This document shows, piece by piece, positions 26,598-46,809 of a DNA stretch of 64,000 bases. The notes beneath the pieces were generated by a model, which had not been told where the DNA came from, did no database searches, and worked only from the letters and a program-made list of their open reading frames with translations. The stretch covers positions 62,001 through 126,000 of IMG/VR virus record IMGVR_UViG_3300009181_000033. One strand, 5' to 3'. The number at the start of each line of letters is the position of its first letter. Position 1 is the first letter of the stretch. The position numbers and the translations under genes were made by a program.

Positions 26598-26670
26598 TGG
26601 GGCCGAACGGAATTGAACCGTTAACCTACCGGTTAAAAGCCGGCTGCTCTACCTGTTGAGCTACGGTCCC
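26598..26670 (-). tRNA. tRNA-Lys(TTT), A4-C69 mismatch, no encoded CCA
   Basis: Cloverleaf GGGACCG..CTTTTAA..GTTCAATT. Confidence 0.85.
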
Positions 26671-26764
26671 GGGTGTGTTACTTGGGATCCCCCATATGGA
26701 TCCTTTTCACTTATTCAATAATAAATACAATCTGCTGTTTCCTCGCACATGGGTTGAGGTAACA

Positions 26765-26839
26765 TGGCGACCTCACGGAGACTTGAACTCCGATATCGAC
26801 CTTGAAAGGGTCGAGTCCTGACCTTTAGACGATGAGGCC
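26765..26839 (-). tRNA. tRNA-Glu(TTC)
   Basis: Cloverleaf with CCA. Confidence 0.9.
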
Positions 26840-26869
26840 GTTGTGATTAATTGTCAAGTTAAGTTAGAT

Positions 26870-26960
26870 TGGCGGATTCTCAAGGATTCGAACCTTGGGT
26901 GGGCTATTAACCCACGGCGGTTTTCAAAACCGCTGCCTTAAACCTCTCGGCCAAGAATCC
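26870..26960 (-). tRNA. tRNA-Ser(TGA)
   Basis: Long variable arm, G73, CCA. Confidence 0.92.
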
Positions 26961-27100
26961 ATATGACTTACAGTGTTTCATTTGACTTTCTTAACTTAAT
27001 CTACCGAGTCTTAGTTTTACACCACCAGATTCACATTTTTTCATCCTCAAATCTTATTAGCTAAAAAAGTTAGACTAGCTGTCTAGGTCGTAATATATAT

Positions 27101-27883
27101 ATGATTATGGAACATAAAGATTTTCTGTGTGAGCATTGTGAGCGTGTCTGCAAGAATGCCATGTCGCTATCTCAACATCGTTTAAGATGTGAGAAGAATC
27201 CTGGGAATATTAAAGATAATTTCTATCTACCTTCTAGGAAGGGAAAATACAAGAAAGACAATCCTTCAGAGTTGACGTTGAAGAGGCGAGCTGCTCGAGC
27301 TAGAAAAGTCTTATTTGAGGAGAATGGCTCACTATCTTGCTTGTACTGTGAAAAACTCACCGAGGATTATTCATGTTTAACTGTACATGAATCAATGTGT
27401 CCAAAGAATCCCAACAGAGGAGACAGAAGCCTTAGTGAAGAGACTAAAAAGAAATTATCACTTATCACGAAGGGTAGAAAGATGTCAGATGAGTTTAAGA
27501 CAAAGATTAGTGAGGCAATGAAGCGAGCTATTCTTGAGCATCCTGAATCTTATACGTCATCCAACAGAGGAAGGGTAAAACAGATTATTGTCGATGGAGT
27601 TAAGCTTCATGGTTCATGGGAGGCAACTTTTTATTCCTGGGCAAAAGAAAATAATCTGAATCCTGAAAGGTGTTTGACTGGATTTGATTACTTCTGGAAT
27701 GGGAAGAACAGAAAGTATTTTCCGGATTTTTATCTTCCGAATCTTGATCTTTATGTCGAAGTGAAAGGATATGAGACCGAACAAGATAGAGAAAAATGGA
27801 GACAGTTTCCTGAGAAGATTATTGTTCTAAAAAAAGAAGAGATAAGAAGCATTCTGAAAGGATCTTATTCAATCCGATTTTAA
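27101..27883 (+). CDS. free-standing homing-type endonuclease: Zn-finger repeats, NUMOD3-like helices, PD-(D/E)xK domain
   Basis: CEHC..H..C, SEETKKKLS, YFPDFYLP...YVEVKG; antisense inside the tRNA cluster. Confidence 0.8.
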   Translation: MIMEHKDFLCEHCERVCKNAMSLSQHRLRCEKNPGNIKDNFYLPSRKGKYKKDNPSELTLKRRAARARKVLFEENGSLSCLYCEKLTEDYSCLTVHESMCPKNPNRGDRSLSEETKKKLSLITKGRKMSDEFKTKISEAMKRAILEHPESYTSSNRGRVKQIIVDGVKLHGSWEATFYSWAKENNLNPERCLTGFDYFWNGKNRKYFPDFYLPNLDLYVEVKGYETEQDREKWRQFPEKIIVLKKEEIRSILKGSYSIRF

Positions 27884-27889
27884 AGAGTT

Positions 27890-27967
27890 TGGTGGAACGG
27901 GTGGGACTCGAACCCACACATGTCCGGTTATGAGCCGGGTAATCTGAACCAATTGATTTACCGTTCC
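27890..27967 (-). tRNA. tRNA(CAT), Met or Ile2
   Basis: Cloverleaf, CTCATAA loop, AATC/GATT D-stem, CCA. Confidence 0.85.
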
Positions 27968-27978
27968 ATTTAGAGATT

Positions 27979-28056
27979 TGGTGGGACAGGAGGGACTCGA
28001 ACCCCCACATGTTCGCTTATGAGGCGACTAATCTGAACCTATTGATTTACTGTCCC
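27979..28056 (-). tRNA. tRNA(CAT), Met or Ile2, tandem paralogue
   Basis: Same D-arm as the neighbour with covarying stems, CCA. Confidence 0.85.
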
Positions 28057-28067
28057 ATTTTAGTATT

Positions 28068-28144
28068 TGGCACCCCCAGATGGATTCGAACCACCGACCG
28101 GTCGGGTAGAAACCGACAGCTCTAATCCGCTGAGCTATGGGGGC
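28068..28144 (-). tRNA. tRNA-Arg(TCT)
   Basis: Cloverleaf, CCA. Confidence 0.9.
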
Positions 28145-28169
28145 GTGTTGTGTTTTCTTTTGTGATTTT

Positions 28170-28254
28170 TGGTGGAAGGTGATGGATTCGAACCATCGAA
28201 GGCGGTGCCGGCAGATTTACAGTCTGCTCCCTTTAGCCACTCGGGAAACCTTCC
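28170..28254 (-). tRNA. tRNA-Tyr(GTA)
   Basis: Long variable arm, CCA. Confidence 0.92.
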
Positions 28255-28285
28255 TTGGAGACGTTACGTTGATTATCAAAGAACG

Positions 28286-28371
28286 TGGTACCAGGGACGG
28301 GACTCGAACCCGTACGACTGTGAGGTCCGCGGATTTTAAGTCCGCTGCGTATACCATTCCGCCACCCTGGC
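28286..28371 (-). tRNA. tRNA-Leu(TAA)
   Basis: Long variable arm, CCA. Confidence 0.92.
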
Positions 28372-28417
28372 AAGGTGAGGGACCTATTGTGACCGGGTCC
28401 CTGGGCGGTGTATTTAT

Positions 28418-28738
28418 TTACTTAGTTTTGGTCTTGGTCGCCGTTGGTGTCTTCTTGGTGGGTGTTGTCTTCTCGAGGAGGACTGGAACGACCTGTGCGT
28501 AGTAGGATGATGGGACGTCAGGTCGACGATGGTTGATGTTGGAGGCGCATGAGGCAGCCTTGGATCGTGAGTAGAAGATCTGGGCTTCGGCCTTGACAGA
28601 CCAGATTCCACGGAGTCGACCGGAGTATGCACGGCGGTTGAGGAACTTGCCTGCGTTTGCCTCCCGCACGATGTAGGCGGTGTAGTACTTGTCCATGTCG
28701 ATGTCTGAGGCGAACTGCTGCGTCTTGGTGTTATTCAT
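28418..28738 (-). CDS. hypothetical protein
   Basis: Promoter-like GTAAATC..TATAA upstream, hairpin downstream. Confidence 0.65.
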   Translation of the reverse strand: MNNTKTQQFASDIDMDKYYTAYIVREANAGKFLNRRAYSGRLRGIWSVKAEAQIFYSRSKAASCASNINHRRPDVPSSYYAQVVPVLLEKTTPTKKTPTATKTKTK

Positions 28739-28798
28739 GTTGTTTATATTATTCTTTCCTTGGCTGGATTTACAAACTATTTTTTGGGGTGGAATCTG

Positions 28799-29014
28799 TT
28801 AGGCTGCGAGGATTGTGGCGGTGTTGGAGGCGATGTGTTTGGCGTTGTCGTTGGTGGTGATGATGGCTTCTTGTGAGTTTGAGAAGAAGATGTTGTTGCG
28901 TGGGTCGATGATGGGGTCGATGTGGATGATGGGGAGGAAGGATCCTGAGGGAGTGAGGATGACTTGACCGATTTGGAGGGAGCTGACCTTGGTGGTTGTT
29001 GTGTTGTTGCTCAT
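28799..29014 (-). CDS. hypothetical protein (LQIGQVI)
   Basis: ORF track; KOW-like start. Confidence 0.55.
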   Translation of the reverse strand: MSNNTTTTKVSSLQIGQVILTPSGSFLPIIHIDPIIDPRNNIFFSNSQEAIITTNDNAKHIASNTATILAA

Positions 29015-29038
29015 GGTGGGTATAAGTATGTTGATTTT

Positions 29039-29112
29039 GAGCCACCTGTCGGAATCGAACCGACGACCTACGGGTTAAAAGCCCGCTGCTCTACCGACTG
29101 AGATACAGTCCC
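29039..29112 (-). pseudogene. chimeric tRNA: Lys(TTT) 5' half fused to the 3' half of a GCCACCT/AGGTGGC (Thr-type) tRNA
   Basis: Acceptor strands GGGACTG and AGGTGGC do not pair; AGGTGGC pairs with GCCACCT at 29774-29780. Confidence 0.8.
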
Positions 29113-29148
29113 ATGACGTCAATCTAAGCGAGGCGACCCCAGTGGGAA

Positions 29149-29232
29149 TGGAGCCTGAGGTCAGATTCGAACTGACGTGGGTTACCCGCCGCGTTACAAA
29201 TGCGGTCCAATCGACCTCTATGGGACTCAGGC
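29149..29232 (-). tRNA. tRNA-Thr(TGT) with atypical long variable arm
   Basis: GCCTGAG/CTCAGGC, TTTGTAA loop, GGGTAACCC extra arm, T73-CCA. Confidence 0.8.
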
Positions 29233-29703
29233 TTGATTCTTGAATTCTCTGTTACCTTTTCTTATTCGTGTTGATGTTTTTTCTTTTGATGATCTTCCCC
29301 AATTTCTAAAGTTAGGTGTTAGTGCGTGACAGTTAGGACATAATACTCTAAGATTTTCTTTTGTATTATTAGTATGATTACCGTCGATATGATCGATTTC
29401 TAGAATTGTCTGTCCATTATCTCGTGTCTTATTATAACCGCATTGAGAACAAGTATTATTCGCTTCTTGCAATAATCGTTCTCGTCGTTTACCGTAACCC
29501 AGCTTTTCAAAAGGAACCGAAGACCAATCAGTATAAGAATGTTGATTCTTTGCTTCTTTACCTCTTCTCGACTTCATTGCTTCGTAAAAAGCTTCTGTCT
29601 TGGGAGGAACAGCAATCCTATCAGGGTTTTCCTTACAGTGCCTTTCATGATATTTCAATCCTCTTTTTCCACATTCTCTTGAACAATATTTACATGTATC
29701 CAT
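29227..29703 (-). CDS. HNH homing endonuclease
   Basis: CSQCG, LEIDHIDGN..NN..ENLRVLCPNCH; stop codon lies inside tRNA-Thr. Confidence 0.9.
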   Translation of the reverse strand: MDTCKYCSRECGKRGLKYHERHCKENPDRIAVPPKTEAFYEAMKSRRGKEAKNQHSYTDWSSVPFEKLGYGKRRERLLQEANNTCSQCGYNKTRDNGQTILEIDHIDGNHTNNTKENLRVLCPNCHALTPNFRNWGRSSKEKTSTRIRKGNREFKNQA

Positions 29704-29747
29704 ATTACTAAGTATTAGTTACATGCAACCGTTGACCAAAAAAAGTG

Positions 29748-29780
29748 AAACCGTTGCTCTACCAGCTGAGCTAAGGTGGC
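29748..29780 (-). pseudogene. orphan tRNA 5' half (Thr-type), broken in the anticodon loop
   Basis: GCCACCTTAGCTCAGCTGGTAGAGCAACGGTTT followed by unrelated sequence. Confidence 0.8.
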
Positions 29781-29815
29781 GGGTTGTGGGCGGGTTGTTT
29801 CCGCCCGAGGTGTGT

Positions 29816-30520
29816 TTATCCGTTCATCGTCTTGGAGGGCTTGACGGTGTCGTCGCTCCTGGTGATGAGCTCAACATCGGAGGTGAAGAGGTAGATGGGC
29901 TTGCGGCCTTCGATCTCCACGTAGCATCTGATGCGCTGTGAGCTGTCGACGATGCCGGTGAGTCCGATGAAGCGAGGATCTCCGCCGATGATGCGGACGA
30001 GGTCGCCTTGTTCGATCCTGACGTTGCGAGATCGCTCGGTGGCGGCGACACGGTTGTGATGTTGGAGATGGAGTGAAATTGATGCGATGGTGGCTGCATC
30101 GAAGTTGGAGATGATGTCGCTGAAGATGACAGCGGCTTGGTCGTTGAGCTTCGGCAGCTTGGCGCCGGCCTTCTCGACCTTCTTCATGTGTGCCGGCTTC
30201 TTGTTGTCGTTGAGAGCCTGTAGCGCTGCCAGCTTCTCTGCCTTGGCTGCAGCTCGGGCGCCGCGCCGGTCGGCACGCTCTGCCTCGAGCTTGGAGAGCT
30301 TGTTGGCCTTGTTTGCCTCGCGGGTGGCCTTGCGCTCGGCCTTTGCCTCGTCGTCGGTGGATGGCGACTTCTTGCCCTTGGCAAGTTCGGCCTTGACAGG
30401 CTTTGCCATGGCAACGGCCGGCTCGGAGGAAGCGGATGCGTCCTTGGCAGCCTTGCGAGCCTTGGCAGCAGCGAGAGCCTTATCGATTGCGGAGAGCTTG
30501 GTCGTGTCAGTCATTTCCAT
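29816..30520 (-). CDS. Lys/Ala-rich protein with C-terminal KOW motif
   Basis: Histone-H1-like N-terminus; IEQGDLVRIIGGD..FIGLTGIV. Confidence 0.75.
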   Translation of the reverse strand: MEMTDTTKLSAIDKALAAAKARKAAKDASASSEPAVAMAKPVKAELAKGKKSPSTDDEAKAERKATREANKANKLSKLEAERADRRGARAAAKAEKLAALQALNDNKKPAHMKKVEKAGAKLPKLNDQAAVIFSDIISNFDAATIASISLHLQHHNRVAATERSRNVRIEQGDLVRIIGGDPRFIGLTGIVDSSQRIRCYVEIEGRKPIYLFTSDVELITRSDDTVKPSKTMNG

Positions 30521-30861
30521 ATTCCTTGTTGTTTGGTTGCCGTTACTTTCTTAATTTACTCTGTGGTTGCCGACTTTGCACCGACTATTTTTCGTTTGCG
30601 ATTTTAATTTCTTCCTCCGTTGGAGGGCGCAGTTTGAAGCTGGAGGAAGGAATGACGAAGATTCCGTCGTAGATGAGATCCCCTGCCATGTTGAGGCAAC
30701 CCCCGATGGTGTCGATGATGGGGAAGGTCTCGCCGATGTAGTGATTCACGTAGACTCGTTTATTGACGTCGAAGTATATCCAGTCTTTGGTGAGTACCGC
30801 CATCAGGCGAGGTGTCGTGTTGTTGAGTTTTGGATAGAGAGGCTTTTGCTTTTCTTCCATG

Positions 30862-31212
30862 TCAGTAGTGTCCTGGTCGAGTGGTGTGACCCGACCAGGC
30901 GGTACCGTCCCAGATGTATGCATGTTCTGTGCCAAAATCTGGCCAAGCTTCTCGAAGCATCTCGTCGAGGTTGTCGTAGAAGACGAATTCCTTGTCTTCC
31001 CCACGATCCCTGGCGTATGCCACGGTCTCGGCGAGGGTGTCACCCAAGGAGCTCAGGTTGCCGAGCTCCACGAGTTCTCGAGCTAGCTTGGATGAGTTGT
31101 AATGATTCGTGAGGGTTGCGCCTACTCCCTCAGGGCGGCCGTCGTAGTGACAGTAAACGCCCTCGATGGATCCGTTAGCGTGAATGATTCCGATGCATGA
31201 GCGAGTTGACAT
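30862..31212 (-). CDS. conserved-looking phage hypothetical protein
   Basis: MSTRS.IG...GVYCHYDG.PEGVG..L. Confidence 0.75.
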   Translation of the reverse strand: MSTRSCIGIIHANGSIEGVYCHYDGRPEGVGATLTNHYNSSKLARELVELGNLSSLGDTLAETVAYARDRGEDKEFVFYDNLDEMLREAWPDFGTEHAYIWDGTAWSGHTTRPGHY

Positions 31213-31221
31213 GTGTACCTT

Positions 31222-31452
31222 TCAGTGATTGGATGCGAGGGCGAGAGGTTGGACTTCGGTGCGTAGTCTCTGGACGGTGGAGAGGAAGCCGATGTAGGCT
31301 TCGTCGATGGCATCGATCTCCCTGAAGTCAGGGTCGGTGGCGTTCTCCTCCAGGACTTGCAGCTCTTTGATGCGATTCTTCATCTGTCTCAGCTCGAATT
31401 CGAGTGAGGTGAGGTGAGACATCTTCAGGGTGTAGAACAGCTGAGGAATCAT
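31222..31452 (-). CDS. hypothetical protein
   Basis: RBS AAAGGAA, GC3 codon pattern. Confidence 0.6.
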   Translation of the reverse strand: MIPQLFYTLKMSHLTSLEFELRQMKNRIKELQVLEENATDPDFREIDAIDEAYIGFLSTVQRLRTEVQPLALASNH

Positions 31453-31463
31453 TCTTTTTCCTT

Positions 31464-31721
31464 TCAGTAGGAAGCCTGGCGACAGATGACTGGCTTTTGG
31501 CTTGACGGCATTAGGAGCCTCTTCTTGTAGCCGTTTCCGACATTGATGCAGTTGAAGTAGAAGACTGCTTGAGCCAGATCACCACGGAACGAGTAGCGGG
31601 TTCGGTAGCTACCCTTGCTGTACCGGCCGACCTGCACGAGGAACTCGGTGGCGGAGGAGTATGCAATGTGCTTGCCGTTGAGTGTTGCGGTCTTGAGGTT
31701 CGTCTGCATTCCGTTCATCAT
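31464..31721 (-). CDS. hypothetical protein
   Basis: GTGCAAAGTCAAC promoter upstream. Confidence 0.7.
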   Translation of the reverse strand: MMNGMQTNLKTATLNGKHIAYSSATEFLVQVGRYSKGSYRTRYSFRGDLAQAVFYFNCINVGNGYKKRLLMPSSQKPVICRQASY

Positions 31722-31963
31722 GATCTTAATCTACCTTGAGGATTGTTGACTTTGCACTCAGTCGAGAGAGGCCTTCAGATTCGCGATGCCGATCTCGAAC
31801 GCCCGGATGTCGAGAGGATCCGTGGCGGTACGCAGGGACTCCGTCATGCTGTCGAGCAGCGTTCGACGGTATTCCACCGGCAGATTGGTGAGGTCGAGCT
31901 TCTTAACTTCGGATCGGTTGGCTTCCATGGTTCTACTCTATCAGGTTGAGGTGGAACTTTTCA

Positions 31964-32188
31964 CTACCTGCCCCATTGCTGAGGAATCGACTTTCGAAGA
32001 ATCTCGAGGATTCCGCCGAAGTTGCCCAAATCATCATCATCATCGAGATCATCTAGTGCGGCACGAATCCGCTTCGCCTCCTCGAGGGTCATGCACATGG
32101 AGACACAGTCAGACTTACCTGGCACACCTGGTACATACTTTGTGATGATCATGATCTCTTTGTACTCCTTCTCAGTTGAGCTTTTCAC
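31964..32188 (-). CDS. hypothetical protein
   Basis: ORF track; real start may be an internal Met after a GTGAAA promoter variant. Confidence 0.5.
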   Translation of the reverse strand: MKSSTEKEYKEIMIITKYVPGVPGKSDCVSMCMTLEEAKRIRAALDDLDDDDDLGNFGGILEILRKSIPQQWGR

Positions 32189-32535
32189 ACTCGGCCGATG
32201 GCGGAAAGGAACTGCTTCTTCGCCTCGGCGCCGAGGACCGCACCGACCATCACGTAGAGCGCCTCGCGGAAGGACGTGAACTTGGCGAGGGTCGCCGAGA
32301 ACTCCATGACGTGGTTACCGTGGATGGGGGAGATGTAGGAGGCGTTCCGTTTGACCGCGTCATTGATCTCATCGAGTGAGCGGACGAGGCGACATCCGAT
32401 ACTCTCAAGTTCCTCAGCGTGTCGATCGACCGTCGCGGCGATGGTCAGGAGGTCGCACTGTGTGAGGGTCCACTCCCTCTCGTTGGGGGAGATGAGGGTG
32501 AGAACAGCGTTCTCGAACTTATTGGTGTTGTTCAT
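32185..32535 (-). CDS. hypothetical protein
   Basis: GTGCAA promoter 36 nt upstream. Confidence 0.7.
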   Translation of the reverse strand: MNNTNKFENAVLTLISPNEREWTLTQCDLLTIAATVDRHAEELESIGCRLVRSLDEINDAVKRNASYISPIHGNHVMEFSATLAKFTSFREALYVMVGAVLGAEAKKQFLSAIGRV

Positions 32536-33049
32536 AGATTAGTTATACTTCAGCGAATGTTGACTTTGCACTCACATGCAGAAGAAGAGCACCACGGTGG
32601 CGTAGAAGCAAGCTAGTGTGAAGCACCCGACGATTCCGTACGCCACCGTCCGCACCGCGAACTGCGCGGGAGAGATGCGTTCACCACGGCTGTTCACCAT
32701 CAGTTCCTTCAGCTCGTCAACCATGAGACAAGTGTACTCCGCAGAATGTTGACCTTGCACCGCTCCAAAAATATTTTTTATTTTCTTCCCTCCCCAGGAC
32801 CCTCCGACAATCCCCGGACTGCATCCCCAGGCTGCCCAGGATGCCCTCAGAATAGTCTTTGCCACCAGGACGGGTTGACATCCATGCCGGCATTTGAAAA
32901 CACTCCTGAAGGCATCCTGGCGCAAGTATGTCAAAGAGCGGGATTAGAATGGTGTCAAATCTGACCCATGGGTCTATCTCGAATCAGCTTGTTTTCAAAT
33001 GCCGGGTATGACAATAAATGTCACATTGACATGTGCTTTTTTGTGTACT

Positions 33050-33277
33050 TTAGAGAGCAGATGGGACAGTGGGTCTAGGGGGTAGGATGACTTCCTCGTC
33101 GTCGATGATTGAGGTGTCGATGAGATCGTTCATGTCCTTAGCAGACCTCTTAAGGTAATACCTCCCGCCGTCAACCGAAATGGAACCACACTTGCAGGTG
33201 ACGAAGTCATGCACGCCTCTGCTCTCGATGTTGTCGCTGCACTTCCTGCATTGAGCTGAGTTTCTGAGGATGCCCAT
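33050..33277 (-). CDS. small Zn-ribbon phage protein
   Basis: RNSAQCRKC.D.IES..HDFVTCKCG.ISVDGG; start at MGILRN. Confidence 0.75.
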   Translation of the reverse strand: MGILRNSAQCRKCSDNIESRGVHDFVTCKCGSISVDGGRYYLKRSAKDMNDLIDTSIIDDEEVILPPRPTVPSAL

Positions 33278-33290
33278 GGTGTTAAGCCTT

Positions 33291-34607
33291 TCAGCGCCAG
33301 GCGCCGTTGATCTGCTTCGCGTTGTCCATCTGGACGAGGACGTCCGAGGTGTGGAAGTGCATCTTGCAACCCTTGCCAAGGACGTAGCCTCGGCGGATCC
33401 TCGAGGGACCAGGAGCTGCACACTCTCCGTCGGTCATGATGAGCAAGCCATCCCAGCGGCCACGGTTCTTCGGATCGTTGGCGAGCTGAGTGGGAGCATT
33501 GAAGTCGGTTCCGCCACCACGAACCCTCTTGGCAGGAATGTTTGCGCCCTTGCGCCAGGTGTAGACATCCTTGTTGAGAGCGATCGTGTCGAAGGGAACA
33601 ACGTCGATGGTGACGTTCTTGGTGAGGCTACCGAGTTCACCGAAGAATTCTGCCAGCATGTTGTTGCTGACCGATCCCGACTGATCGATGGCGACAAGGA
33701 TCTTGGCTACGTAGCCTTTCTTGACGCCTGGGTGGATGTAAGGGTAGCGCTTGTTGATTCGCTTGATCGAGGTGCTGCGGCCGCCCTTGACGAGGTTGCC
33801 GACGAACTGGCGAAGGACGTTCCGCCAATTGATCACGGTGGTGATCGACTTGCGGATGGCTTCAATCATGTCGGCCGACATGTTTCCCCAGCCATTGGCC
33901 TGGGCGTCGGCGTGCTTGGCTGCCTTCTCGACCATTGCCCTGACCTTGCCTTCAACGTATTCACGCTTCTCCTCCGGAATGCTGTCCCAGGCGTCATGGT
34001 CGTCCATCGAGACAATGATGTTGCCTTCCCCGGTGAGTTCTTCGGGAGTCATGCCTTGCTTCTCGGCTTCCTCCTTGATCTTTTCGAAGTACCATTCGGA
34101 AGACTGCATGGGTGGAAGCTTGGCGATGATCTCCGCCAGCTTCATGCCCTGCTTCTCGTCTGCCGTGAAGTCTCGGCCTTCGGGGTGCTTTGGGAAGACA
34201 CCGGGAACGAGTGCGAATTCGGGGAGGATGCGATCACCCGTGACGTGGGAGGAATATTGCTTATTTTCCTTGTCGAGGAGGATGGAGTTAATGGCAAGAT
34301 CGGTGGCGACGTTCCAAAGTTGGGGTGGTGTCTTGCGGCGTGCCTGGACGTGGCCGAACACGAGGTGATAGTATTCGTGATTGATGACACCACGGATCTC
34401 GCGTGGCGAGAGGGAACCGAAGAATTCCGGGTTCCAGTACATCACGATTTCGTCGTTCTTCTCATTGAAGGCGACCGCGGCTGTGGGGATCGATCGAGTC
34501 GGAGTCTTCTGGATATGTCTGCTGAGCTCTGCGAAGAAAGGAGAATCCTGCAGGAAAGAAATGAGATGCCTGTCAAGGTTGAAATCCGTCTCAGCTTGAG
34601 TGAACAT
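33291..34607 (-). CDS. DUF2201-type HExxH metallopeptidase + VWA domain protein
   Basis: INHEYYH, NVATDLAIN, MIDAS DQSGS, GGGT, TDG. Confidence 0.9.
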   Translation of the reverse strand: MFTQAETDFNLDRHLISFLQDSPFFAELSRHIQKTPTRSIPTAAVAFNEKNDEIVMYWNPEFFGSLSPREIRGVINHEYYHLVFGHVQARRKTPPQLWNVATDLAINSILLDKENKQYSSHVTGDRILPEFALVPGVFPKHPEGRDFTADEKQGMKLAEIIAKLPPMQSSEWYFEKIKEEAEKQGMTPEELTGEGNIIVSMDDHDAWDSIPEEKREYVEGKVRAMVEKAAKHADAQANGWGNMSADMIEAIRKSITTVINWRNVLRQFVGNLVKGGRSTSIKRINKRYPYIHPGVKKGYVAKILVAIDQSGSVSNNMLAEFFGELGSLTKNVTIDVVPFDTIALNKDVYTWRKGANIPAKRVRGGGTDFNAPTQLANDPKNRGRWDGLLIMTDGECAAPGPSRIRRGYVLGKGCKMHFHTSDVLVQMDNAKQINGAWR

Positions 34608-34686
34608 AAATTACCCTTATCACTGAAGGTGCGGACTTTGCACCGGTGGTCAAAACAATTTCTTTCCCACAAGATCCTATTTAAAT

Positions 34687-34956
34687 TCAGTCGAATCTCT
34701 TCACTGTCACAGTTGTCGTGGTGACGACTTCCTCGGTGCAAACTCTGAAGTTCTCCTTGGGAATGTCCCAGTAGAACCATCTGAGATTGCCGTTCGACAG
34801 GAGCTGAGTATTGCTATATTCCCCGAATATATACTCAGTTCCTGCCGGCACAACGGTGATGGTCTCTGACTGGAGATTATTATATGACCATTCCTTTGTG
34901 AGGATGGCCACCTTACGCGTATTTTTTGAGGTGGATGTTTCGCTCTTGCTGCCCAT
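34687..34956 (-). CDS. hypothetical protein
   Basis: ORF track; start approximate. Confidence 0.5.
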   Translation of the reverse strand: MGSKSETSTSKNTRKVAILTKEWSYNNLQSETITVVPAGTEYIFGEYSNTQLLSNGNLRWFYWDIPKENFRVCTEEVVTTTTVTVKRFD

Positions 34957-35113
34957 GGTGTACATCCTAAAATGCTGTTGAGCAATCTTACAACTATTTT
35001 TAGAAAATCATTTTAAGCAGATCATCTGCTCCCAGGAGGGAACATCAAAGCTACTGAGCCTATCACGATTGTGATCCAAAAAATGGAAACTATGATATCG
35101 CTCATGGCAGGTT

Positions 35114-35335
35114 TCAGATTGGATTCTTTTCGAGAGCCTCGAGTGTTGCTTCTGTGACCCGCTGTTCTCTTCTCTGGAGGAGCTCTAACCAGGATTCATC
35201 TGAACTGATCATTGCTTGGATCGTCTGGGTGACGGCGTCTGTGATCTGATCGTTAACTCCGTTGGGAAAAGACATGTGATTGAGCAGAAGCACGATGAGC
35301 TCTTCGTTGGTGTAACGTTTTGTGATGGACAACAT
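35114..35335 (-). CDS. hypothetical protein
   Basis: RBS AAAGGTG. Confidence 0.55.
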   Translation of the reverse strand: MLSITKRYTNEELIVLLLNHMSFPNGVNDQITDAVTQTIQAMISSDESWLELLQRREQRVTEATLEALEKNPI

Positions 35336-35553
35336 GTTTCACCTTTTCATGGCGCTGAGCTTGCCCAGTACCTTCTCCAAAGAGCCTTGTCGAACCTTTA
35401 AATCATTCTCTTCCTCAGAGTCCTCGAGGGTACTGTATAATCGAAGCTCAATCTCATCCAGCTTGTAACGGACGAGCGTGTGTAGGTGTGTGATGTCGAT
35501 ATTGTCTAGCATAGCCCAAGCATTTTAAGACATCTTTTTTCATTGTACAAATT

Positions 35554-35628
35554 TGGTGGATCCAGTGGGATTCGAACCTACAGCCTACGGGTTAAAAGCC
35601 CGCTGCACTACCGTTGTGCTATGGATCC
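35554..35628 (-). tRNA. tRNA-Lys(TTT)
   Basis: Complete cloverleaf with CCA. Confidence 0.92.
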
Positions 35629-35688
35629 AGAAAAGAAAAGAGAAGGAGGAGCATTAAGGAAGCTTGGGCTAGAAGAAAAGCTGAGAAA

Positions 35689-36465
35689 TCAAGAACATTG
35701 GATGATGCCTTTCTCATAGAGACCTCGGTTGTTGATACCAAGGACGTACGTCCTGCCTGACGTACCAAACCTATTTTTAGAAACTGTGAAGATTCTCTCA
35801 CCGTATGTCTCCGACTTCTTCTCAAGGTCCACGTAGACCTCACCTCTCACGTCGACGGCATGCAGGATTGTGTTCTTTCCTGCGAAGACGGCCGGTCCAT
35901 TGCCGTGGCTTTTTGTCACCTGACCGATGAAGATCACAACACCGAAGTTCTTCTTGGCCCAGTCGGTCAAAGCCTCGACCGAACGGACGGCCGTCATGGA
36001 ATTCGTGAGGGCACCGTTGTACTTGCCATCGTCCAGGGTCTGAAGCGAGTCCTGGAGGATGAACACCTGCTTGCCGGGGTTCGCCTTGCGGAGAGAATCG
36101 GCATGCTTCAGCAGGTCGCTGACCAAGGTGTCCTGTCCGACGACGAAGCCGTTGCGGAGACCGAGGCGCTCCACGACCATCTTGACCTGATAGAGGCTTT
36201 CCTCACCGGTATTGTAGAGACAGATGTGACCGGCTGAGGTGATGGCGTTGGCAAGCTGGAGGAGCAAGGTTGTCTTGCCGGCGCCAGGGGTGCCGGTGAG
36301 CATCATGACGGAGGAGGGCACGAAGCCGTCACCGCCGAGGGCGTCGTCGAACCAGGAGATGCCGACCTTCTTGCGATCGCGGAGAGCATCGGGGACCTGG
36401 ATGTCCATGATGTTCATGCCGCGCTTGAGACCACGAATTCCGACGTTCAGATTCATCTTCGACAT
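35689..36465 (-). CDS. RadA/Sms-like RecA-family ATPase (core only)
   Basis: GTPGAGKT, GEES, DSLQT, GQVTK, LHAVD and KNRFG signature; no Zn finger or Lon-like domain. Confidence 0.85.
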   Translation of the reverse strand: MSKMNLNVGIRGLKRGMNIMDIQVPDALRDRKKVGISWFDDALGGDGFVPSSVMMLTGTPGAGKTTLLLQLANAITSAGHICLYNTGEESLYQVKMVVERLGLRNGFVVGQDTLVSDLLKHADSLRKANPGKQVFILQDSLQTLDDGKYNGALTNSMTAVRSVEALTDWAKKNFGVVIFIGQVTKSHGNGPAVFAGKNTILHAVDVRGEVYVDLEKKSETYGERIFTVSKNRFGTSGRTYVLGINNRGLYEKGIIQCS

Positions 36466-37970: not shown

Positions 37971-37972
37971 TT

Positions 37973-42700: not shown

Positions 42701-42702
42701 CG

Positions 42703-43679: not shown

Positions 43680-43975
43680 TGATCAAGGCGAATGACGTTG
43701 TCTTCTGGAAGGGTCCCAATGGTCTCTACCGCCGCTGGGCAGACGTGGTAGACACGAACGGTGACCAGGTAAAGATCAAGCTCCGCCACGACATTTTCGA
43801 CTACGACCCTTGCAACGGAAAGCGCCACCTGCGGGAAGGAGAGATCCTCAGTGTGCCAATCAACGAAGTCATTTACAACAGCGAATACTATCGATCGAAG
43901 GAGAAGATCAAGGATCACATGGAGTCAGTGAGGAAAGAAAGCAAGAAACCCATTGCCGTAGGAGAAATCTGGTGA
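43676..43975 (+). CDS. hypothetical SH3-like protein
   Basis: ATGA overlap; IKANDVV. Confidence 0.65.
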   Translation: MMIKANDVVFWKGPNGLYRRWADVVDTNGDQVKIKLRHDIFDYDPCNGKRHLREGEILSVPINEVIYNSEYYRSKEKIKDHMESVRKESKKPIAVGEIW

Positions 43976-44175
43976 AGAAAGTCATTTGCTTGCTGTTGCT
44001 TGCTTCTTTCACCCTGGTTTCAACAGCACAAGCTGGCACGGCCGAGTGCGCAACCATCACAGACCACGACACAAGAATGATGTGCTTTGCCTCCCAAACT
44101 AACAACTCCTCGTACTGCTCTTTCATCAAAGACCACGACAAGCGTGCACAGTGCCGCATTATGACGGGGAATTAA
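43972..44175 (+). CDS. small secreted Cys-repeat protein
   Basis: Signal peptide; C..I.DHD.R..C twice. Confidence 0.65.
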   Translation: MKKVICLLLLASFTLVSTAQAGTAECATITDHDTRMMCFASQTNNSSYCSFIKDHDKRAQCRIMTGN

Positions 44176-44228
44176 AATAATCTCACCCGTCGGTGCAAAG
44201 TCAACTCCGAACAAGGTAATCTAGAACC

Positions 44229-44948
44229 ATGAAGACGAAGAAGAGCACCGACGAGCTGGAAAACGACGACTTCATCATCGAATCCCCCGCCGGAGAATCC
44301 TCCGACGACTGGGACACCGTCTCCGATAACGTTCCACGCTCCATGCTCGGAGCTCCTTCAAAGGATCGATCAGCCTCACGACCGGACATCTCCAAGCTCC
44401 CCAGCGGAATCGGACCTGACGGAATCCCAACCTTCGTGCGAGGTGACAAGGTCGTCATCGAACGATACTCCGGAGCACTCAAGGGTCACCCGTACCTCGA
44501 CACCCGTACCTACGTCATCCAGAACGTAGACACGGTCACCGGAAAGATCACCATGTACGACGCCGCCCAAGGCCAGTTCGCCACCGACAACTGGAAGGCC
44601 GGACTGCAGAACGGCAACGTCTACAAGCTAGCCAAGAATACCACCATCGATCTCTCCTCCAAGCGCAAGCGCGGTCGTCCCCGCAAGAACCCCGACGCTC
44701 CCACCAACGTCGCCAAGCCCCCTCCCGCCCTCGACGCCAACGGCATGCCCGTCGTCAAGAAGCGCGGCCGTCCCGCAGGCTCAAAGAACCGTCCCAAGGA
44801 AGTCATCATCAACGAAAAGCGGGCAAAGAAGGACGCACGATTCTTCAAGCGCTACGCCAAGCACCCTTCCTCCCACCAACAGAAGGCCGATCCCAAGTGG
44901 ATCTTCCTCCTCCCCATGGTCGACCTCCTCAAGGTCCTCACCAGGTAA
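44229..44948 (+). CDS. AT-hook (HMGA-like) DNA-binding protein
   Basis: Acidic N-terminus; KRKRGRPRK and KKRGRPAGSKNRPK; promoter at 44193-44228. Confidence 0.75.
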   Translation: MKTKKSTDELENDDFIIESPAGESSDDWDTVSDNVPRSMLGAPSKDRSASRPDISKLPSGIGPDGIPTFVRGDKVVIERYSGALKGHPYLDTRTYVIQNVDTVTGKITMYDAAQGQFATDNWKAGLQNGNVYKLAKNTTIDLSSKRKRGRPRKNPDAPTNVAKPPPALDANGMPVVKKRGRPAGSKNRPKEVIINEKRAKKDARFFKRYAKHPSSHQQKADPKWIFLLPMVDLLKVLTR

Positions 44949-44951
44949 CCC

Positions 44952-45227
44952 ATGCAAGGCTCACTCTGGCGGGTGAAGATGCATGTCTACGGACACACCT
45001 TCAATGGGAACGGTGACATGTTCCTCTTGAAGCCAGGTGAGCTCGTCGTTGTAGGAGACGGAATGGTTCAAGGCGACATGCTAGGGTGGGCAGACTCACA
45101 ATTCAGACCATTCGATCGAAAACTCGTGAACGCCCATCTGTGGGTCAAGGTGCTCCTACCACGCCAGTGTTGGATGAATCGGACATACTTCAACCGTGAT
45201 TCCATGTGGCTGGATAGGGTCTCATGA
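44952..45227 (+). CDS. SH3-like small protein
   Basis: KPGELVV...WVKVL. Confidence 0.6.
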   Translation: MQGSLWRVKMHVYGHTFNGNGDMFLLKPGELVVVGDGMVQGDMLGWADSQFRPFDRKLVNAHLWVKVLLPRQCWMNRTYFNRDSMWLDRVS

Positions 45228-45439
45228 GGAGGTTCGAGGCGGGCGACTTGATCACCCTGAAATATGCGTACGCTTACTCCCCATCATCGATCGCACCCGC
45301 AATCGTACTCGAGGTCATTCGAGGTGGATACAAGGTGCTCTTCCCAAACGGCGTCTACGAACTCAGCTCAGACTACGCCCACGAATCATGCCAACTTCTT
45401 CAAGATTTCGGTGCAAAGTCAACATTCGCTGAAGTATAA
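45224..45439 (+). CDS. MKPGD-like small protein
   Basis: FEAGDLI...IVLE...YKVLFPNG. Confidence 0.65.
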   Translation: MRRFEAGDLITLKYAYAYSPSSIAPAIVLEVIRGGYKVLFPNGVYELSSDYAHESCQLLQDFGAKSTFAEV

Positions 45440-45473
45440 CTGAATTGAAGGTGAGGAAAGGAAGGGCAAGAAC

Positions 45474-45773
45474 GTGAACAAGAACGTGAACAACTTCGTC
45501 GTCCAGGTTATCGAGCACTACAACGACCGCGGCGGTGACGGTGGCATGGCCACGACCATCGTCGGTGTGGTGAAGACCCTCGAGGCGGGCATGCAGATGC
45601 TCGATGATATGGGTGCCAAGGAAGGCCGAGTCCTTCAGATCTTCCCTCCCATGGTCCGCGAGGACGGACGGCTCGTCCCTGGTCCGCCCGACGTCTTCCC
45701 TTACTGTGCTCCTCCTCAGAAGAAGGCCCGTGGCAAGAAGATCGCTGCGGATGTAGCCGAAACTGCTGAGTGA
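45474..45773 (+). CDS. hypothetical protein
   Basis: Promoter at ~45410 and RBS. Confidence 0.6.
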   Translation: MNKNVNNFVVQVIEHYNDRGGDGGMATTIVGVVKTLEAGMQMLDDMGAKEGRVLQIFPPMVREDGRLVPGPPDVFPYCAPPQKKARGKKIAADVAETAE

Positions 45774-46039
45774 GAAAATCTGACGGACAGTGAAAAGCTC
45801 AACATCAAAAGGAGTATAACAGGATCATGAACGAATTCAGTCACGCGGAACTGCGGCTCATCCTCGAAGGCCTTGATGTCGTCCGTGAACGGATGCGGGA
45901 AGATATCAGTGTCAACCTCAACCTCGGCGAGGAAGAGTACAACCAGGTGGTCAGGCTCCAAGACAAGATCATCGAGGCCCTGGAATCTCGCTGCTTCTAC
46001 TGAGTATAAAGTCAACACCCTCTGGAGTATAACTGAATC

Positions 46040-46408
46040 ATGAAGGGCATGAAGAAGGTTGTCACCCTCCCAGCCGGAACCAAATACCACTGGAATCGCT
46101 CACCAGAAGAAGTAAAAGATATCTACAGTCGACTCCCTCCACTCGATGACGCCGGCGAACCCACCATCGTCAACTCCACAGGCACCTCCCACCTCAATGA
46201 ACCAACGATAGTCACCATCACCAAAACACGTAAGATCGACTGGCACTCCTGGTTCAATAAACCCAAATTCCTCGTCGAAGGGCTAACCACCATCAACGGA
46301 AACCCAAAAATCATCATGTTCTCCCTACCCCCCAACGAGTTCTTCCGCCTCGAGGAAGAGGAAGTCATCGTTAACGCCTCGCGAGTCCGCCGGCCCGTGG
46401 CACGCTGA
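46040..46408 (+). CDS. hypothetical protein, paralogue of 46808-47167
   Basis: PAGT.Y, D.AGEP, WFNKP, TING.P shared. Confidence 0.75.
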   Translation: MKGMKKVVTLPAGTKYHWNRSPEEVKDIYSRLPPLDDAGEPTIVNSTGTSHLNEPTIVTITKTRKIDWHSWFNKPKFLVEGLTTINGNPKIIMFSLPPNEFFRLEEEEVIVNASRVRRPVAR

Positions 46409-46417
46409 ACTTCGCCA

Positions 46418-46453
46418 GTGCAAAGTCAACATCAAAAGGAGTATAATAGAATC
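46418..46453 (+). promoter_or_regulatory. consensus leaderless promoter GTGCAA-N18-TATAAT-N6-ATG
   Basis: Perfect -10 box; near-identical copies at ~45790 and 47135. Confidence 0.8.
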
Positions 46454-46618
46454 ATGGTCAGCAAGGATAAGCAGGCACAGGTTGCTCAGGACGCTCTCTA
46501 CGAGATTGGTTGGGAGATGACTCCTGCCGAGGCTCGTGAGCAGCTCGATTTCTTCGCGAAGATGAGCATTGATATTTGGCTTCAATCTGGTCAGACGGAC
46601 CAATTTGCTTGGGAGTGA
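46454..46618 (+). CDS. hypothetical protein
   Basis: Start reassigned to MVSKDK. Confidence 0.6.
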   Translation: MVSKDKQAQVAQDALYEIGWEMTPAEAREQLDFFAKMSIDIWLQSGQTDQFAWE

Positions 46619-46767
46619 TCATGACATTATACGATGTTGTTTATACTAATTCGTTGGGAATTCGCCAGCTCACCGTTGTATCTTCTTTGGTGATTAAAGA
46701 GACGATTGCTCTTTATTCTCGTGAAGGTGGAGTGATTTTTTCGATCAAGCAGCGGACATAACCGCTT

Positions 46768-46809
46768 GGGACTGTAGCACAATGGCAGTGCAGCTGGCTT
46801 TTAACCAGT
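46768..46809 (+). pseudogene. tRNA-Lys(TTT) 5' half without T arm
   Basis: GGGACTGTAGCACAATGGCAGTGCAGCTGGCTTTTAACCAGT followed by coding sequence. Confidence 0.8.

What the first reader, a model, noticed from the sequence alone, without database searches (positions are those of the whole stretch)
26598..46809. Four different tRNA-Lys(UUU) sequences: two complete, one chimeric, one half
Seen: Lys(TTT) arms occur at 26598, 29039, 35554 and 46768, with different anticodon stems (GCCGG, GCGGG, GCGGG, GCTGG). The two broken copies diverge just 3' of the anticodon arm. Established: tRNA-Lys(UUU) is cleaved by PrrC and by PARIS AriB, and T5 counters PARIS with its own tRNA-Lys. Inference: repeated acquisition under anticodon-nuclease pressure. 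The halves may be recombination scars or decoy anticodon stem-loops.
Basis: partly seen in the sequence, partly recalled or inferred. Interest (0 to 1): 0.6.

Follow-up and report, generated by a model that had tools for sequence, protein, structure and literature searches.

The report
Lysine tRNA copies and recombination scars
A 298-kb freshwater phage has two intact lysine tRNA genes and two dead 5' fragments; both fragments are rearrangement scars, one of them the end of a mobile HNH-nuclease cassette that replaced part of a threonine tRNA gene, and nothing yet shows they act as decoys.

Summary
Four different tRNA-Lys(UUU)-derived sequences are present: two complete genes (26596-26670 and 35554-35628, minus strand) and two pieces that stop at the end of the anticodon arm.

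The "chimeric" copy is Lys positions 1-43 fused to positions 44-76 of a tRNA-Thr. The missing Thr 5' part (positions 1-26) lies 685 nt upstream, at 29755-29780. The 685 nt between them hold an HNH endonuclease gene, an odd 84-nt tRNA-Thr(UGU) and the Lys piece. A contig ~98-99% identical over its aligned flanks, from another lake metagenome, has an uninterrupted tRNA-Thr(UGU) there. So this is a polymorphic homing-type cassette that replaced the resident anticodon arm. Homologues of the HNH sit next to tRNA genes in all eight other phages inspected.

The "half" (46768-46809, plus strand) is the 3'-truncated remnant of a solitary tRNA-Lys. Related contigs keep that gene complete (41/42 identical) behind the same small gene.

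"Recombination scars" is therefore supported. "Anticodon-nuclease pressure" and "decoys" remain untested: the host is unknown and no RNA data exist. The closest known system is SegB-type homing in T-even tRNA clusters. I rate this a new variant of a known kind, of moderate interest.

The parts
26596..26670 (-). tRNA-Lys(UUU) I. Complete, in the main tRNA cluster (Gly-Lys-Glu-Ser). One A.C mismatch in the acceptor stem; no encoded CCA.
   Evidence: ARAGORN; Rfam 70.2 bits over the full model; structure. A contig of run X2 carries a 35-nt internal deletion here.
35554..35628 (-). tRNA-Lys(UUU) II. Complete, solitary, with encoded CCA, downstream of a KaiC/RecA-like ATPase gene (35689-36465).
   Evidence: ARAGORN; Rfam 72.5 bits; Pfam for the neighbour. 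94.7% identical to a complete tRNA-Lys in related contig L031.
29070..29112 (-). Foreign tRNA-Lys(UUU) positions 1-43 (acceptor 5' strand GGGACTG, D arm with a G10-to-T mismatch, intact anticodon arm). This is the right-hand end of the HNH cassette.
   Evidence: Absent from the cassette-free allele in runs X2 and X3.
29040..29069 (-). Resident tRNA-Thr positions 44-76 (variable loop, T arm, acceptor 3' strand AGGTGGC, discriminator U).
   Evidence: The same T arm and acceptor occur in intact tRNA-Thr genes of other phage contigs. Continuous with the Thr 5' part in the X2/X3 allele.
29755..29780 (-). Resident tRNA-Thr positions 1-26 (acceptor 5' strand GCCACCT plus D arm), orphaned by the insertion.
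   Evidence: 7/7 Watson-Crick complement to 29041-29047. Identical 26 nt in intact tRNA-Thr(UGU) of L004, L008 and L010.
29070..29754 (-). 685-nt polymorphic cassette that replaced the 17-nt anticodon arm (positions 27-43) of the resident tRNA-Thr.
   Evidence: X2 record 4 (4570 nt; 11-17 differences per aligned piece of about 0.9-1.25 kb) and X3 record 11 jump from 29069 to 29755 with 17 other letters between, which read as a Thr UGU or CGU anticodon arm. X5 records 27 and 28 match the window exactly across parts of the cassette, and L001 carries the inserted form.
29227..29703 (-). HNH endonuclease gene (158 aa) inside the cassette. Its stop codon overlaps the start of the 84-nt tRNA-Thr.
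   Evidence: Pfam HNH above cut-off and PHROG HNH families, E 2e-18. Homologues lie beside tRNA genes in 8 of 8 other phage contexts.
29149..29232 (-). 84-nt tRNA-Thr(UGU) with a 12-nt variable region and encoded CCA, carried by the cassette. It is the only intact Thr(UGU) gene left at this locus.
   Evidence: ARAGORN; Rfam 44.2 bits over the full model.
46768..46809 (+). tRNA-Lys(UUU) positions 1-43 only (42 nt, D and anticodon stems intact). It lies in the 67-nt gap between ORF 46621-46761 and ORF 46829-47167.
   Evidence: 41/42 identical to the complete tRNA-Lys of L033 and diverges right after the anticodon stem. No matching 3' half anywhere in the genome.
46454..46618 (+). 54-aa gene. Its homologues are followed directly by a complete tRNA-Lys(UUU) on the same strand in related contigs L031 and L033, so it serves as the marker of orthology for the 'half' locus.
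   Evidence: BLASTP E 6e-24 (L031) and 2e-13 (L033); gene layouts.
46829..47167 (+). ORFan gene (112 aa, GTG start, paralogue of 46040-46408). It begins 20 nt after the truncation point and sits where the tRNA's 3' third should be.
   Evidence: No homologues beyond near-identical genomes (that search sees only proteins of 0.55-1.75x the query length).
27101..27883 (+). Second endonuclease gene (260 aa, NUMOD3 motif, endonuclease PHROG) inside the tRNA cluster, between tRNA-Ser and tRNA-Met on the opposite strand.

Best explanation
The tRNA genes of this freshwater jumbo phage turn over through nuclease-triggered recombination. The two broken Lys copies are by-products of that process. Two Lys(UUU) genes are intact and presumably decode AAA/AAG.

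The 'chimeric' copy is not a Lys gene that broke in place. A 685-nt cassette replaced positions 27-43 of a resident tRNA-Thr. The cassette holds an HNH endonuclease gene, its own 84-nt tRNA-Thr(UGU), and the first 43 nt of a foreign tRNA-Lys. This left the Thr 5' part orphaned upstream and fused the incoming Lys 1-43 in register to Thr 44-76.

The most likely mechanism is homing. The nuclease breaks a cassette-free tRNA gene, and repair copies the cassette from a donor. Repair uses the conserved D-arm and variable-loop/T-arm sequences shared by different tRNAs as homology arms. The cassette's own Thr(UGU) makes up for the gene it destroys.

The 'half' is the remnant of a solitary tRNA-Lys that is ancestral behind the 54-aa gene. 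It lost everything 3' of position 43 when the downstream DNA was replaced.

Shown: the anatomy, the presence/absence polymorphism, the orthology of the half with complete genes, and the tRNA association of the HNH clade. Inferred: that this HNH makes the break, that 26/27 and 43/44 are its break or repair hot spots, and that neither fragment has a function.
For: 1. The acceptor 5' strand at 29774-29780 pairs 7/7 with 29041-29047. The chimera's own 5' strand mismatches at 3 of 7 positions. The same acceptor, D arm and T arm belong to intact tRNA-Thr genes in five other phage contigs.
2. Contigs from independent lake metagenomes carry an uninterrupted tRNA-Thr at this site: a UGU arm in X2 and a CGU arm in X3. 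X2 record 4 is 4570 nt long and about 98-99% identical over its aligned flanks. L001 carries the cassette, and X5 contigs match parts of it exactly.
3. The cassette ORF is an HNH endonuclease.
4. A 60%-identical homologue in L017 sits between a D-arm remnant ending at position 26 and a tRNA remnant starting at position 44. Homologues in cultured phages lie next to tRNA-Thr genes in Jada (GGU nearest; CGU and UGU further along) and next to tRNA-Thr(UGU) in vB_OspM_OC and XbC2. They lie next to a tRNA-Lys(UUU) with a ~48-nt insertion exactly at 26/27 in pEa_SNUABM_50, and next to a like-sized 121-nt gene annotated 'tRNA-Undet' in fHe-Yen9-03. They lie next to other tRNAs in Munch and MA01.
5. 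L033 has a complete tRNA-Lys 41/42 identical to the half, 9 nt after a homologue of the window's 54-aa gene. L031 has a complete Lys 6 nt after another homologue of that gene.
6. No 3' partner for the GGGACTG acceptor exists in the genome. There is no integrase and no group I intron signal.
7. Published precedent: SegB cuts inside tRNA genes, drives inheritance of the T4 tRNA region and amplifies tRNA genes (PMC2330249, PMC13096335).
Against: - No donor carrying HNH-Thr84-complete Lys was found, so the direction and steps of the event are reconstructed, not observed.
- Nuclease activity and cleavage site are untested.
- The shared 43/44 break could reflect microhomology (the AGGT-type variable loop) and not a cut site.
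- Both fragments keep an intact anticodon hairpin, and the half also keeps its D stem. This is compatible with a retained function.
- All genomes that carry the fragments are near-identical, so purifying selection cannot be measured.
- The reads tool gave contigs only, and contigs show presence, not absence.
Confidence: 0.75

Rival explanations
1. Defence-driven reading. The phage keeps several different Lys(UUU) sequences because host anticodon nucleases deplete tRNA-Lys. On this view the broken copies are kept as anticodon-arm decoys or nuclease sponges.
For: - PARIS AriB cleaves E. coli tRNA-Lys(UUU), Thr(UGU) and Asn(GUU) in the anticodon stem at 40|41, and T5 variants of these three rescue infection. 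The authors note that overexpressed viral tRNAs might also inhibit AriB (PMC12409363).
- This phage carries exactly Lys(UUU) x2, Thr(UGU) and Asn(GUU) among its 14 tRNAs.
- The cassette links a Thr(UGU) gene with a Lys(UUU) piece.
- The four Lys copies differ in the anticodon stem.
- The Thr locus shows three different anticodon-arm alleles among near-identical phages.
- Both fragments keep a perfect anticodon hairpin.
Against: - The host and its defences are unknown, and no bacterial genome of 185,579 species matches these tRNAs.
- All loops are the canonical CUUUUAA.
- Each fragment is fully explained as a junction product.
- The close relative in X2 lacks the chimeric piece entirely, and one X2 contig has a deletion inside Lys I.
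- The chimera has a D-stem mismatch.
- The half region does not fold better than shuffles (z = 0.4).
- No RNA run holds the phage.
Confidence: 0.15
2. Plain codon supply. Two intact Lys(UUU) genes exist because AAA is a top codon of the phage. The broken copies are neutral junk with no link to endonucleases or defence.
For: - In 239 long ORFs, AAA is 38.4 per thousand, level with GAA as the most used among the codon families tabulated, and ACA is the main Thr codon.
- Nine of the phage's 14 tRNA genes have U at the wobble position and read the A-ending codons that the phage uses heavily.
Against: - It does not explain why the fragments break at the same tRNA coordinate.
- It does not explain why one fragment sits at the end of a polymorphic HNH cassette.
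- The host codon usage is unknown, so compensation cannot be tested.
- This reading is compatible with the best explanation for the intact copies and is not a true alternative to it.
Confidence: 0.35
3. The 29039-29780 region is one functional intron-containing or split tRNA-Lys, as ARAGORN proposes when introns are allowed. On the same view the 46768 half is a split-tRNA 5' half joined in trans.
For: ARAGORN with introns allowed models a 74-nt tRNA-Lys with a 668-nt intron. In that model the 5' exon ends in U and the intron ends in G.
Against: - No group I intron match in the region even at E up to 5, nor in the genome near it.
- Outside the HNH ORF only about 210 nt remain, and these are filled by a whole tRNA-Thr and a Lys fragment, which leaves no room for a ribozyme core.
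- The cassette-free allele differs by a replaced 17-nt arm, not a clean insertion.
- The modelled product would combine a Thr-type body with a Lys anticodon and a mismatched stem.
- No 3' half complementary to GGGACTG exists in the genome.
Confidence: 0.03
4. The fragments are att-type remnants of integrase-mediated insertion into tRNA genes.
For: Partial tRNA copies are typical of integration sites.
Against: - No tyrosine-integrase match in the genome, while all 14 control genomes gave matches.
- The record has direct terminal repeats and looks like a virulent jumbo phage.
- att duplications usually keep the 3' part of the tRNA, whereas here the 5' parts are kept.
Confidence: 0.02

Closest known systems
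SegB of phages T4/T6 (free-standing GIY-YIG homing endonuclease in the tRNA cluster; PMC2330249, PMC13096335)
   Same: - A nuclease gene embedded among phage tRNA genes.
- Presence/absence polymorphism between close relatives.
- Flanking tRNA genes travel with the nuclease gene.
- Conserved tRNA sequence serves as target and homology.
- The result is turnover or amplification of tRNA genes.
   Different: - The nuclease here is HNH, not GIY-YIG.
- It sits inside a tRNA gene in place of the anticodon arm, not between genes.
- It carries a replacement for the gene it destroys.
- It leaves in-register chimeric tRNA pieces.
- Cleavage is not demonstrated.
HNH endonucleases F-TflI/II/IV in the tRNA region of phage T5 (cited in PMC2330249, its ref. 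18)
   Same: An HNH-type site-specific nuclease gene encoded within a phage tRNA gene cluster.
   Different: Relatedness to the T5 enzymes was not tested here. No T5-like record appeared among the 30 listed hits (of 50) of the phage search. Insertion inside a tRNA gene is not described for them in the papers read.
T5 tRNA-Lys(UUU)/Thr(UGU)/Asn(GUU) variants that neutralise PARIS AriB (PMC11464382, PMC12409363)
   Same: Phage-borne copies of the same three isoacceptors, with anticodon-stem sequences that differ between copies.
   Different: There is no evidence here of a nuclease, of resistance or of rescue. The host is unknown. The broken copies cannot be charged.
Group I intron-containing bacterial tRNA genes (e.g. 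cyanobacterial tRNA-Leu(UAA))
   Same: A tRNA gene interrupted near the anticodon by a long insert that can carry a homing endonuclease ORF.
   Different: There is no ribozyme core. The anticodon arm is replaced, not split. The insert contains another whole tRNA.

Membership tests
tRNA (Rfam RF00005) | Full cloverleaf with a paired acceptor stem, matched end to end by the covariance model | tested here: met
   Lys I scores 70.2 bits and Lys II 72.5 bits, both over model positions 1-71. ARAGORN agrees.
tRNA (Rfam RF00005) | The same feature, applied to the 'chimeric' copy 29039-29112 | tested here: not met
   Only model positions 8-63 match (43.8 bits). The 5' strand GGGACTG mismatches the 3' strand AGGTGGC at 3 of 7 pairs, and the D stem has a mismatch.
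tRNA (Rfam RF00005) | The same feature, applied to the 'half' 46768-46809 | tested here: not met
   Not called by ARAGORN or Rfam. There is no T arm and no acceptor 3' strand after position 43, and none elsewhere in the genome.
Free-standing homing endonuclease cassette | Intact nuclease ORF with a catalytic motif | tested here: met
   158-aa ORF. Pfam HNH 22.6 bits (cut-off 21.4); PHROG HNH families down to E 2e-18.
Free-standing homing endonuclease cassette | Presence/absence polymorphism at the same site in otherwise near-identical genomes | tested here: met
   The X2 and X3 contigs lack 29070-29754 and have an intact tRNA-Thr. L001 has the insertion, and X5 contigs match parts of it exactly.
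Free-standing homing endonuclease cassette | The enzyme cleaves the cassette-free allele and is inherited preferentially in mixed infection | not testable with these tools
   Needs purified protein and phage crosses.
Free-standing homing endonuclease cassette | Homologues associated with the same kind of target | tested here: met
   8 of 8 other homologue contexts inspected lie within about 300 nt of tRNA genes. Three are at Thr genes and one is at a Lys(UUU) gene with an insertion at 26/27. One is at a like-sized 121-nt gene annotated 'tRNA-Undet', whose sequence I did not read. One lies between tRNA remnants ending at 26 and starting at 44.
SegB / GIY-YIG Seg endonucleases | GIY-YIG catalytic domain | tested here: not met
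   Pfam finds HNH only. It works like SegB but is not a member.
Group I intron in a tRNA gene | Ribozyme core (P1-P9) and a clean insertion between two exon nucleotides | tested here: not met
   No RF00028 match at E up to 5 in 26000-30200, nor near this locus genome-wide. The cassette-free allele shows that 17 nt were replaced.
Anti-defence phage tRNA (T5 tRNA-Lys type) | Escapes cleavage by a host tRNA nuclease and rescues infection | not testable with these tools
   The host is unknown and there is no RNA run. Only the isoacceptor set matches the PARIS target list.
Split (trans-joined) tRNA | A separately encoded 3' half whose acceptor strand complements the 5' half | tested here: not met
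   No T loop followed by a CAGTCCC-type strand (G.U pairs allowed) anywhere in the 297,894-bp genome.
Integrase att-site remnant | A recombinase gene and a duplicated tRNA 3' segment | tested here: not met
   No PF00589 match. The retained pieces are 5' parts.

The most novel reading that the evidence does not exclude
The HNH cassette may be a mobile tRNA-replacement module. On this reading its nuclease breaks Thr/Lys-type tRNA genes at the borders of the anticodon arm (26/27 and 43/44). Homing then swaps in variant Thr(UGU) and Lys(UUU) genes, which are the isoacceptors hit by PARIS-like nucleases. Selfish spread would then double as horizontal transfer of defence-resistant tRNAs between phages. 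The left-over Lys 1-43 pieces could be co-transcribed and act as anticodon-arm decoys.
Probability: 0.12. Interest if true: 0.8.

Novelty: new variant of a known kind. Interest (0 to 1): 0.45.

Why it matters
Homing endonucleases in phage tRNA clusters were recently shown to drive tRNA-gene inheritance and amplification, and so escape from tRNA-cleaving defences (SegB; PMC2330249, PMC13096335). This window shows a natural, polymorphic example from an uncultured freshwater jumbo phage, with a different nuclease class. An HNH gene occupies the place of a tRNA's anticodon arm, brings its own substitute tRNA, and leaves in-register chimeric tRNA pieces.

It also explains where "half" and "chimeric" tRNA genes in phage genomes can come from. 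It warns against reading them as decoys, or as ARAGORN "intron" tRNAs, without comparative evidence.

The junctions recur at 26/27 and 43/44 across three independent lineages. This gives a concrete, testable prediction for the cleavage specificity of this widespread HNH clade.

Tried and rejected
- **Nucleotide search of GenBank phages** with 26000-36000 found no match. The nearest cultured phages share only about 26% protein identity.
- **Searches for relatives through neighbouring proteins.** The 234-aa gene, the HNH, the 122/54/46/165-aa genes and the 112-aa ORFan returned mostly re-assemblies of the same phage. The search sees only proteins of 0.55-1.75x the query length, so its blank says little.
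- **Exact-pattern scans for the broken copies or the 84-nt Thr in IMG/VR** found only the near-identical contig L001. Two scans of 185,579 bacterial species found nothing, so no host source or donor was identified.
- **Split-tRNA partner search:** none found.
- **Group I intron:** none found.
- **Integrase:** none found.
- **T4-type RNA repair.** The Rnl1 family search is uninformative because the controls were silent. RtcB is absent. One borderline RNA_ligase-family hit at genome 37658-38164 (27.6 bits against a cut-off of 27) could equally be a DNA ligase.
- **Fold of the half region** is no more stable than shuffles (z = 0.4).
- **Extra tRNA fragments next to HNH homologues in six cultured phages:** none beyond the annotated genes.
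- **Transcription** could not be tested. 
- **Not attempted:** Complex prediction, structure prediction and the protein atlas. No binding claim is made.

Full report
**Setting.** The window is bases 62001-126000 of a 297,894-bp virus record with direct terminal repeats. It was assembled from a freshwater metagenome. The nearest cultured phages share only about 26% protein identity. ARAGORN finds 14 tRNA genes in the genome. Ten form a cluster at window 26512-29232 on the minus strand, and the rest are solitary.

**Observation.** Two complete tRNA-Lys(UUU) genes are called by both ARAGORN and Rfam: 26596-26670 (70.2 bits) and 35554-35628 (72.5 bits). At 29048-29105 Rfam matches only tRNA model positions 8-63. 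At 46768-46809, on the plus strand, there are 42 nt that align with the other copies from position 1 to the end of the anticodon stem and then stop.
- Genome-wide there are five such hairpins against 0.48 expected from shuffles, and four of them are these Lys arms.
- The 5' parts are 75-83% identical pairwise, so they are four lineages.

**The 'chimeric' copy.**
- Its 3' strand AGGTGGC does not pair with its own 5' strand (3 of 7 mismatches). It pairs 7/7 with GCCACCT at 29774-29780, 685 nt upstream.
- That orphan piece (29755-29780) and the T arm and acceptor at 29040-29069 are the two ends of a tRNA-Thr. The same 26-nt 5' part and the same T arm and acceptor occur in intact tRNA-Thr(UGU/CGU) genes of other IMG/VR phages.
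- Between the two ends lie a ~50-nt leader, an intact 158-aa HNH endonuclease ORF (29227-29703), an 84-nt tRNA-Thr(UGU) with a 12-nt variable region and encoded CCA (29149-29232), a 36-nt spacer, and Lys positions 1-43 (29070-29112).
- ARAGORN with introns allowed reads the whole region as a tRNA-Lys with a 668-nt intron. I reject that model for three reasons: there is no group I intron signal, there is no room for a ribozyme core, and the cassette-free allele described next does not fit a clean insertion.

**Polymorphism.** I laid contigs of four other freshwater metagenome runs on 25400-31000.
- A 4570-nt contig of run X2 has 11-17 differences per aligned piece of about 0.9-1.25 kb. It runs through 27122-29069 and jumps straight to 29755-31000. 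The 17 letters between read as a Thr UGU anticodon arm.
- A contig of X3 has the same joint with a CGU arm.
- Contigs of X5 match parts of the cassette exactly, and IMG/VR contig L001 carries the inserted form.
- So 29070-29754 is a mobile, polymorphic segment. It replaced exactly positions 27-43 of a resident tRNA-Thr. The Lys piece is its right-hand end, fused in register to Thr 44-76.
- The cassette's own Thr(UGU) leaves the phage's tRNA repertoire unchanged.

**The HNH clade and tRNA genes.**
- A 60%-identical homologue in L017 lies between a D-arm remnant that ends at position 26 and a tRNA remnant (variable loop, T arm, acceptor, CCA) that starts at position 44.
- Homologues of 30-45% identity in cultured phages were inspected in seven contexts:
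  - directly after Thr(GGU), with Thr(CGU) and Thr(UGU) further upstream, in Streptomyces phage Jada;
  - 2 nt from Thr(UGU) in Ochrobactrum phage vB_OspM_OC;
  - 76 nt after Thr(UGU) in Xanthomonas phage XbC2;
  - after a 122-nt tRNA-Lys(UUU) in Erwinia phage pEa_SNUABM_50, which carries a ~48-nt insertion exactly after position 26;
  - after a like-sized 121-nt gene annotated 'tRNA-Undet' in Yersinia phage fHe-Yen9-03, whose sequence I did not read;
  - next to other tRNAs in Salmonella phage Munch and Synechococcus phage MA01.
- All eight other contexts inspected (L017 plus these seven) are tRNA-associated.
- A second endonuclease gene (27101-27883) also sits inside the window's cluster.

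**The 'half'.** One metagenome scan with a degenerate Lys II/half pattern gave three informative contigs.
- L033 has a complete tRNA-Lys(UUU) that is 41/42 identical to the half. It diverges from the half exactly after the anticodon stem. It lies 9 nt after a homologue (E 2e-13) of the window's 54-aa gene 46454-46618.
- L031 has a complete Lys (94.7% identical to Lys II) 6 nt after a closer homologue of the same gene (E 6e-24). That homologue itself lies downstream of a homologue of the window's 58-aa gene, with a different 98-aa ORF between them.
- L032 has a complete Lys with a 36/36 match to the half, in a small tRNA cluster.
- The module '54-aa gene followed by tRNA-Lys on the same strand' is therefore ancestral, and the window holds its 3'-truncated remnant.
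- An ORFan gene (46829-47167), paralogous to 46040-46408, now begins 20 nt past the break.
- No complementary 3' half exists in the genome, there is no integrase, and the region does not fold unusually well.

**A shared break point.**
- Both fragments end at tRNA position 43/44.
- The L017 remnant starts at 44.
- The 35-nt deletion inside Lys I in an X2 contig ends between positions 41 and 45.
- The left junctions in the window, in L017 and in the Erwinia phage all lie at 26/27.
- I infer, without proof, that the borders of the anticodon arm are the break or repair hot spots of this nuclease clade. Microhomology in the AGGT-type variable loop is the alternative explanation.

**Why several Lys genes.**
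- Codon supply is sufficient for the intact pair. AAA is 38.4 per thousand, a top codon, and nine of the phage's 14 tRNA genes have U34 and read heavily used A-ending codons.
- The defence reading cannot be excluded. PARIS AriB targets Lys(UUU), Thr(UGU) and Asn(GUU) in the anticodon stem, T5 variants rescue (PMC12409363, PMC11464382), and this phage has all three. PrrC cleaves tRNA-Lys (PMC10264068).
- Against the defence reading: the host is unknown, the loops are canonical, no RNA data exist, and the fragments are fully accounted for as junction products.

**Comparison and verdict.** The closest known system is SegB of T-even phages. SegB recognises the T-loop motif inside tRNA genes, spreads with neighbouring tRNA genes, and amplifies them under defence pressure (PMC2330249, PMC13096335). 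The element here works like that but is not a member: it is HNH, not GIY-YIG. It differs further by occupying the place of an anticodon arm, by carrying a substitute tRNA, and by leaving in-register chimeras. I rate it a new variant of a known kind.

Noticed in passing
window 29149-29232 (-): The cassette's tRNA-Thr(UGU) is 84 nt long, with a 12-nt variable region that could form a 3-bp stem, a weak D stem, an A.C mismatch at 31-39 and an encoded CCA. A long variable arm is unusual for a Thr tRNA. No other IMG/VR contig except the near-identical L001 carries it.
   Followed up: partly
window 26626-26660 and 28152, in contigs of run X2: A close relative carries a 35-nt deletion inside tRNA-Lys I (4-nt microhomology) and 50 extra letters between tRNA-Arg and tRNA-Tyr. 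The cluster is rearranging at strain level.
   Followed up: partly
window 29070-29754 locus, runs X2 and X3: The cassette-free alleles differ from each other only in the 17-nt anticodon arm (anticodon UGU against CGU, with different and imperfect stems), while the D and T arms are the same. The arm itself looks hypervariable.
   Followed up: no
L023 1283-1404 (Erwinia phage pEa_SNUABM_50); L025 479-599 (Yersinia phage fHe-Yen9-03): The Erwinia gene, annotated 122-nt 'tRNA-Lys(ttt)', has a ~48-nt insertion exactly between positions 26 and 27, with an HNH homologue about 60 nt downstream. Rfam still scores it 46.5 bits end to end. The Yersinia gene is 121 nt, annotated 'tRNA-Undet', and also has an HNH homologue about 60 nt downstream, but I did not read its sequence.
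   Followed up: partly
window 26512-26586 (-): tRNA-Gly(UCC) is called by ARAGORN only, with no Rfam match even at E up to 5. Its T loop reads AGCATTA instead of the usual TTCGAAT type. It may be a degenerate or unusual tRNA.
   Followed up: no
window 26685-26703 (-): A hairpin GGATCC-ATATGGG-GGATCC lies just upstream of Lys I. Its first 9 nt equal the 5' end of Lys II. It could be an acceptor-stem remnant of an internally deleted tRNA, or it could be chance.
   Followed up: no
window 45788-45829, 46416-46456, 47135-47176 (+) and 32530-32571 (-): A repeated ~42-nt intergenic motif ends in an AAGGAG ribosome-binding site just before gene starts. The same motif appears in related contigs, where it is read as a pseudo N-terminus 'MQIS..RYIN.M'. 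It is probably a shared promoter/RBS element.
   Followed up: no
window 46040-46408 and 46829-47167 (+); 47171-47668 (+): Two diverged paralogous ORFan genes flank the half-tRNA locus. A pentapeptide-repeat protein gene follows them (Pfam E 3e-32).
   Followed up: partly
window 27101-27883 (+) and 29227-29703 (-): Both endonuclease ORFs, and the L017 homologue, begin with a similar Cys-x2-Cys ... His ... Cys-(K/E)-x-N-P motif, present twice in the 260-aa protein. It is probably a shared zinc-finger DNA-binding module.
   Followed up: no
genome G000:C1:244960-245022 (-), outside the window: A sub-threshold tRNA-like match (25.9 bits) lies 130 nt from tRNA-Gln(UUG). Another HNH ORF sits about 3 kb away at 247982-248383. 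This may be another tRNA remnant.
   Followed up: no
genome G000:C1:37658-38164 (-), outside the window: A 449-aa ORF gives a borderline RNA_ligase (PF09414) match, 27.6 bits against a cut-off of 27. It could be an Rnl2-like RNA ligase or a DNA ligase, and bears on any tRNA-repair scenario.
   Followed up: no
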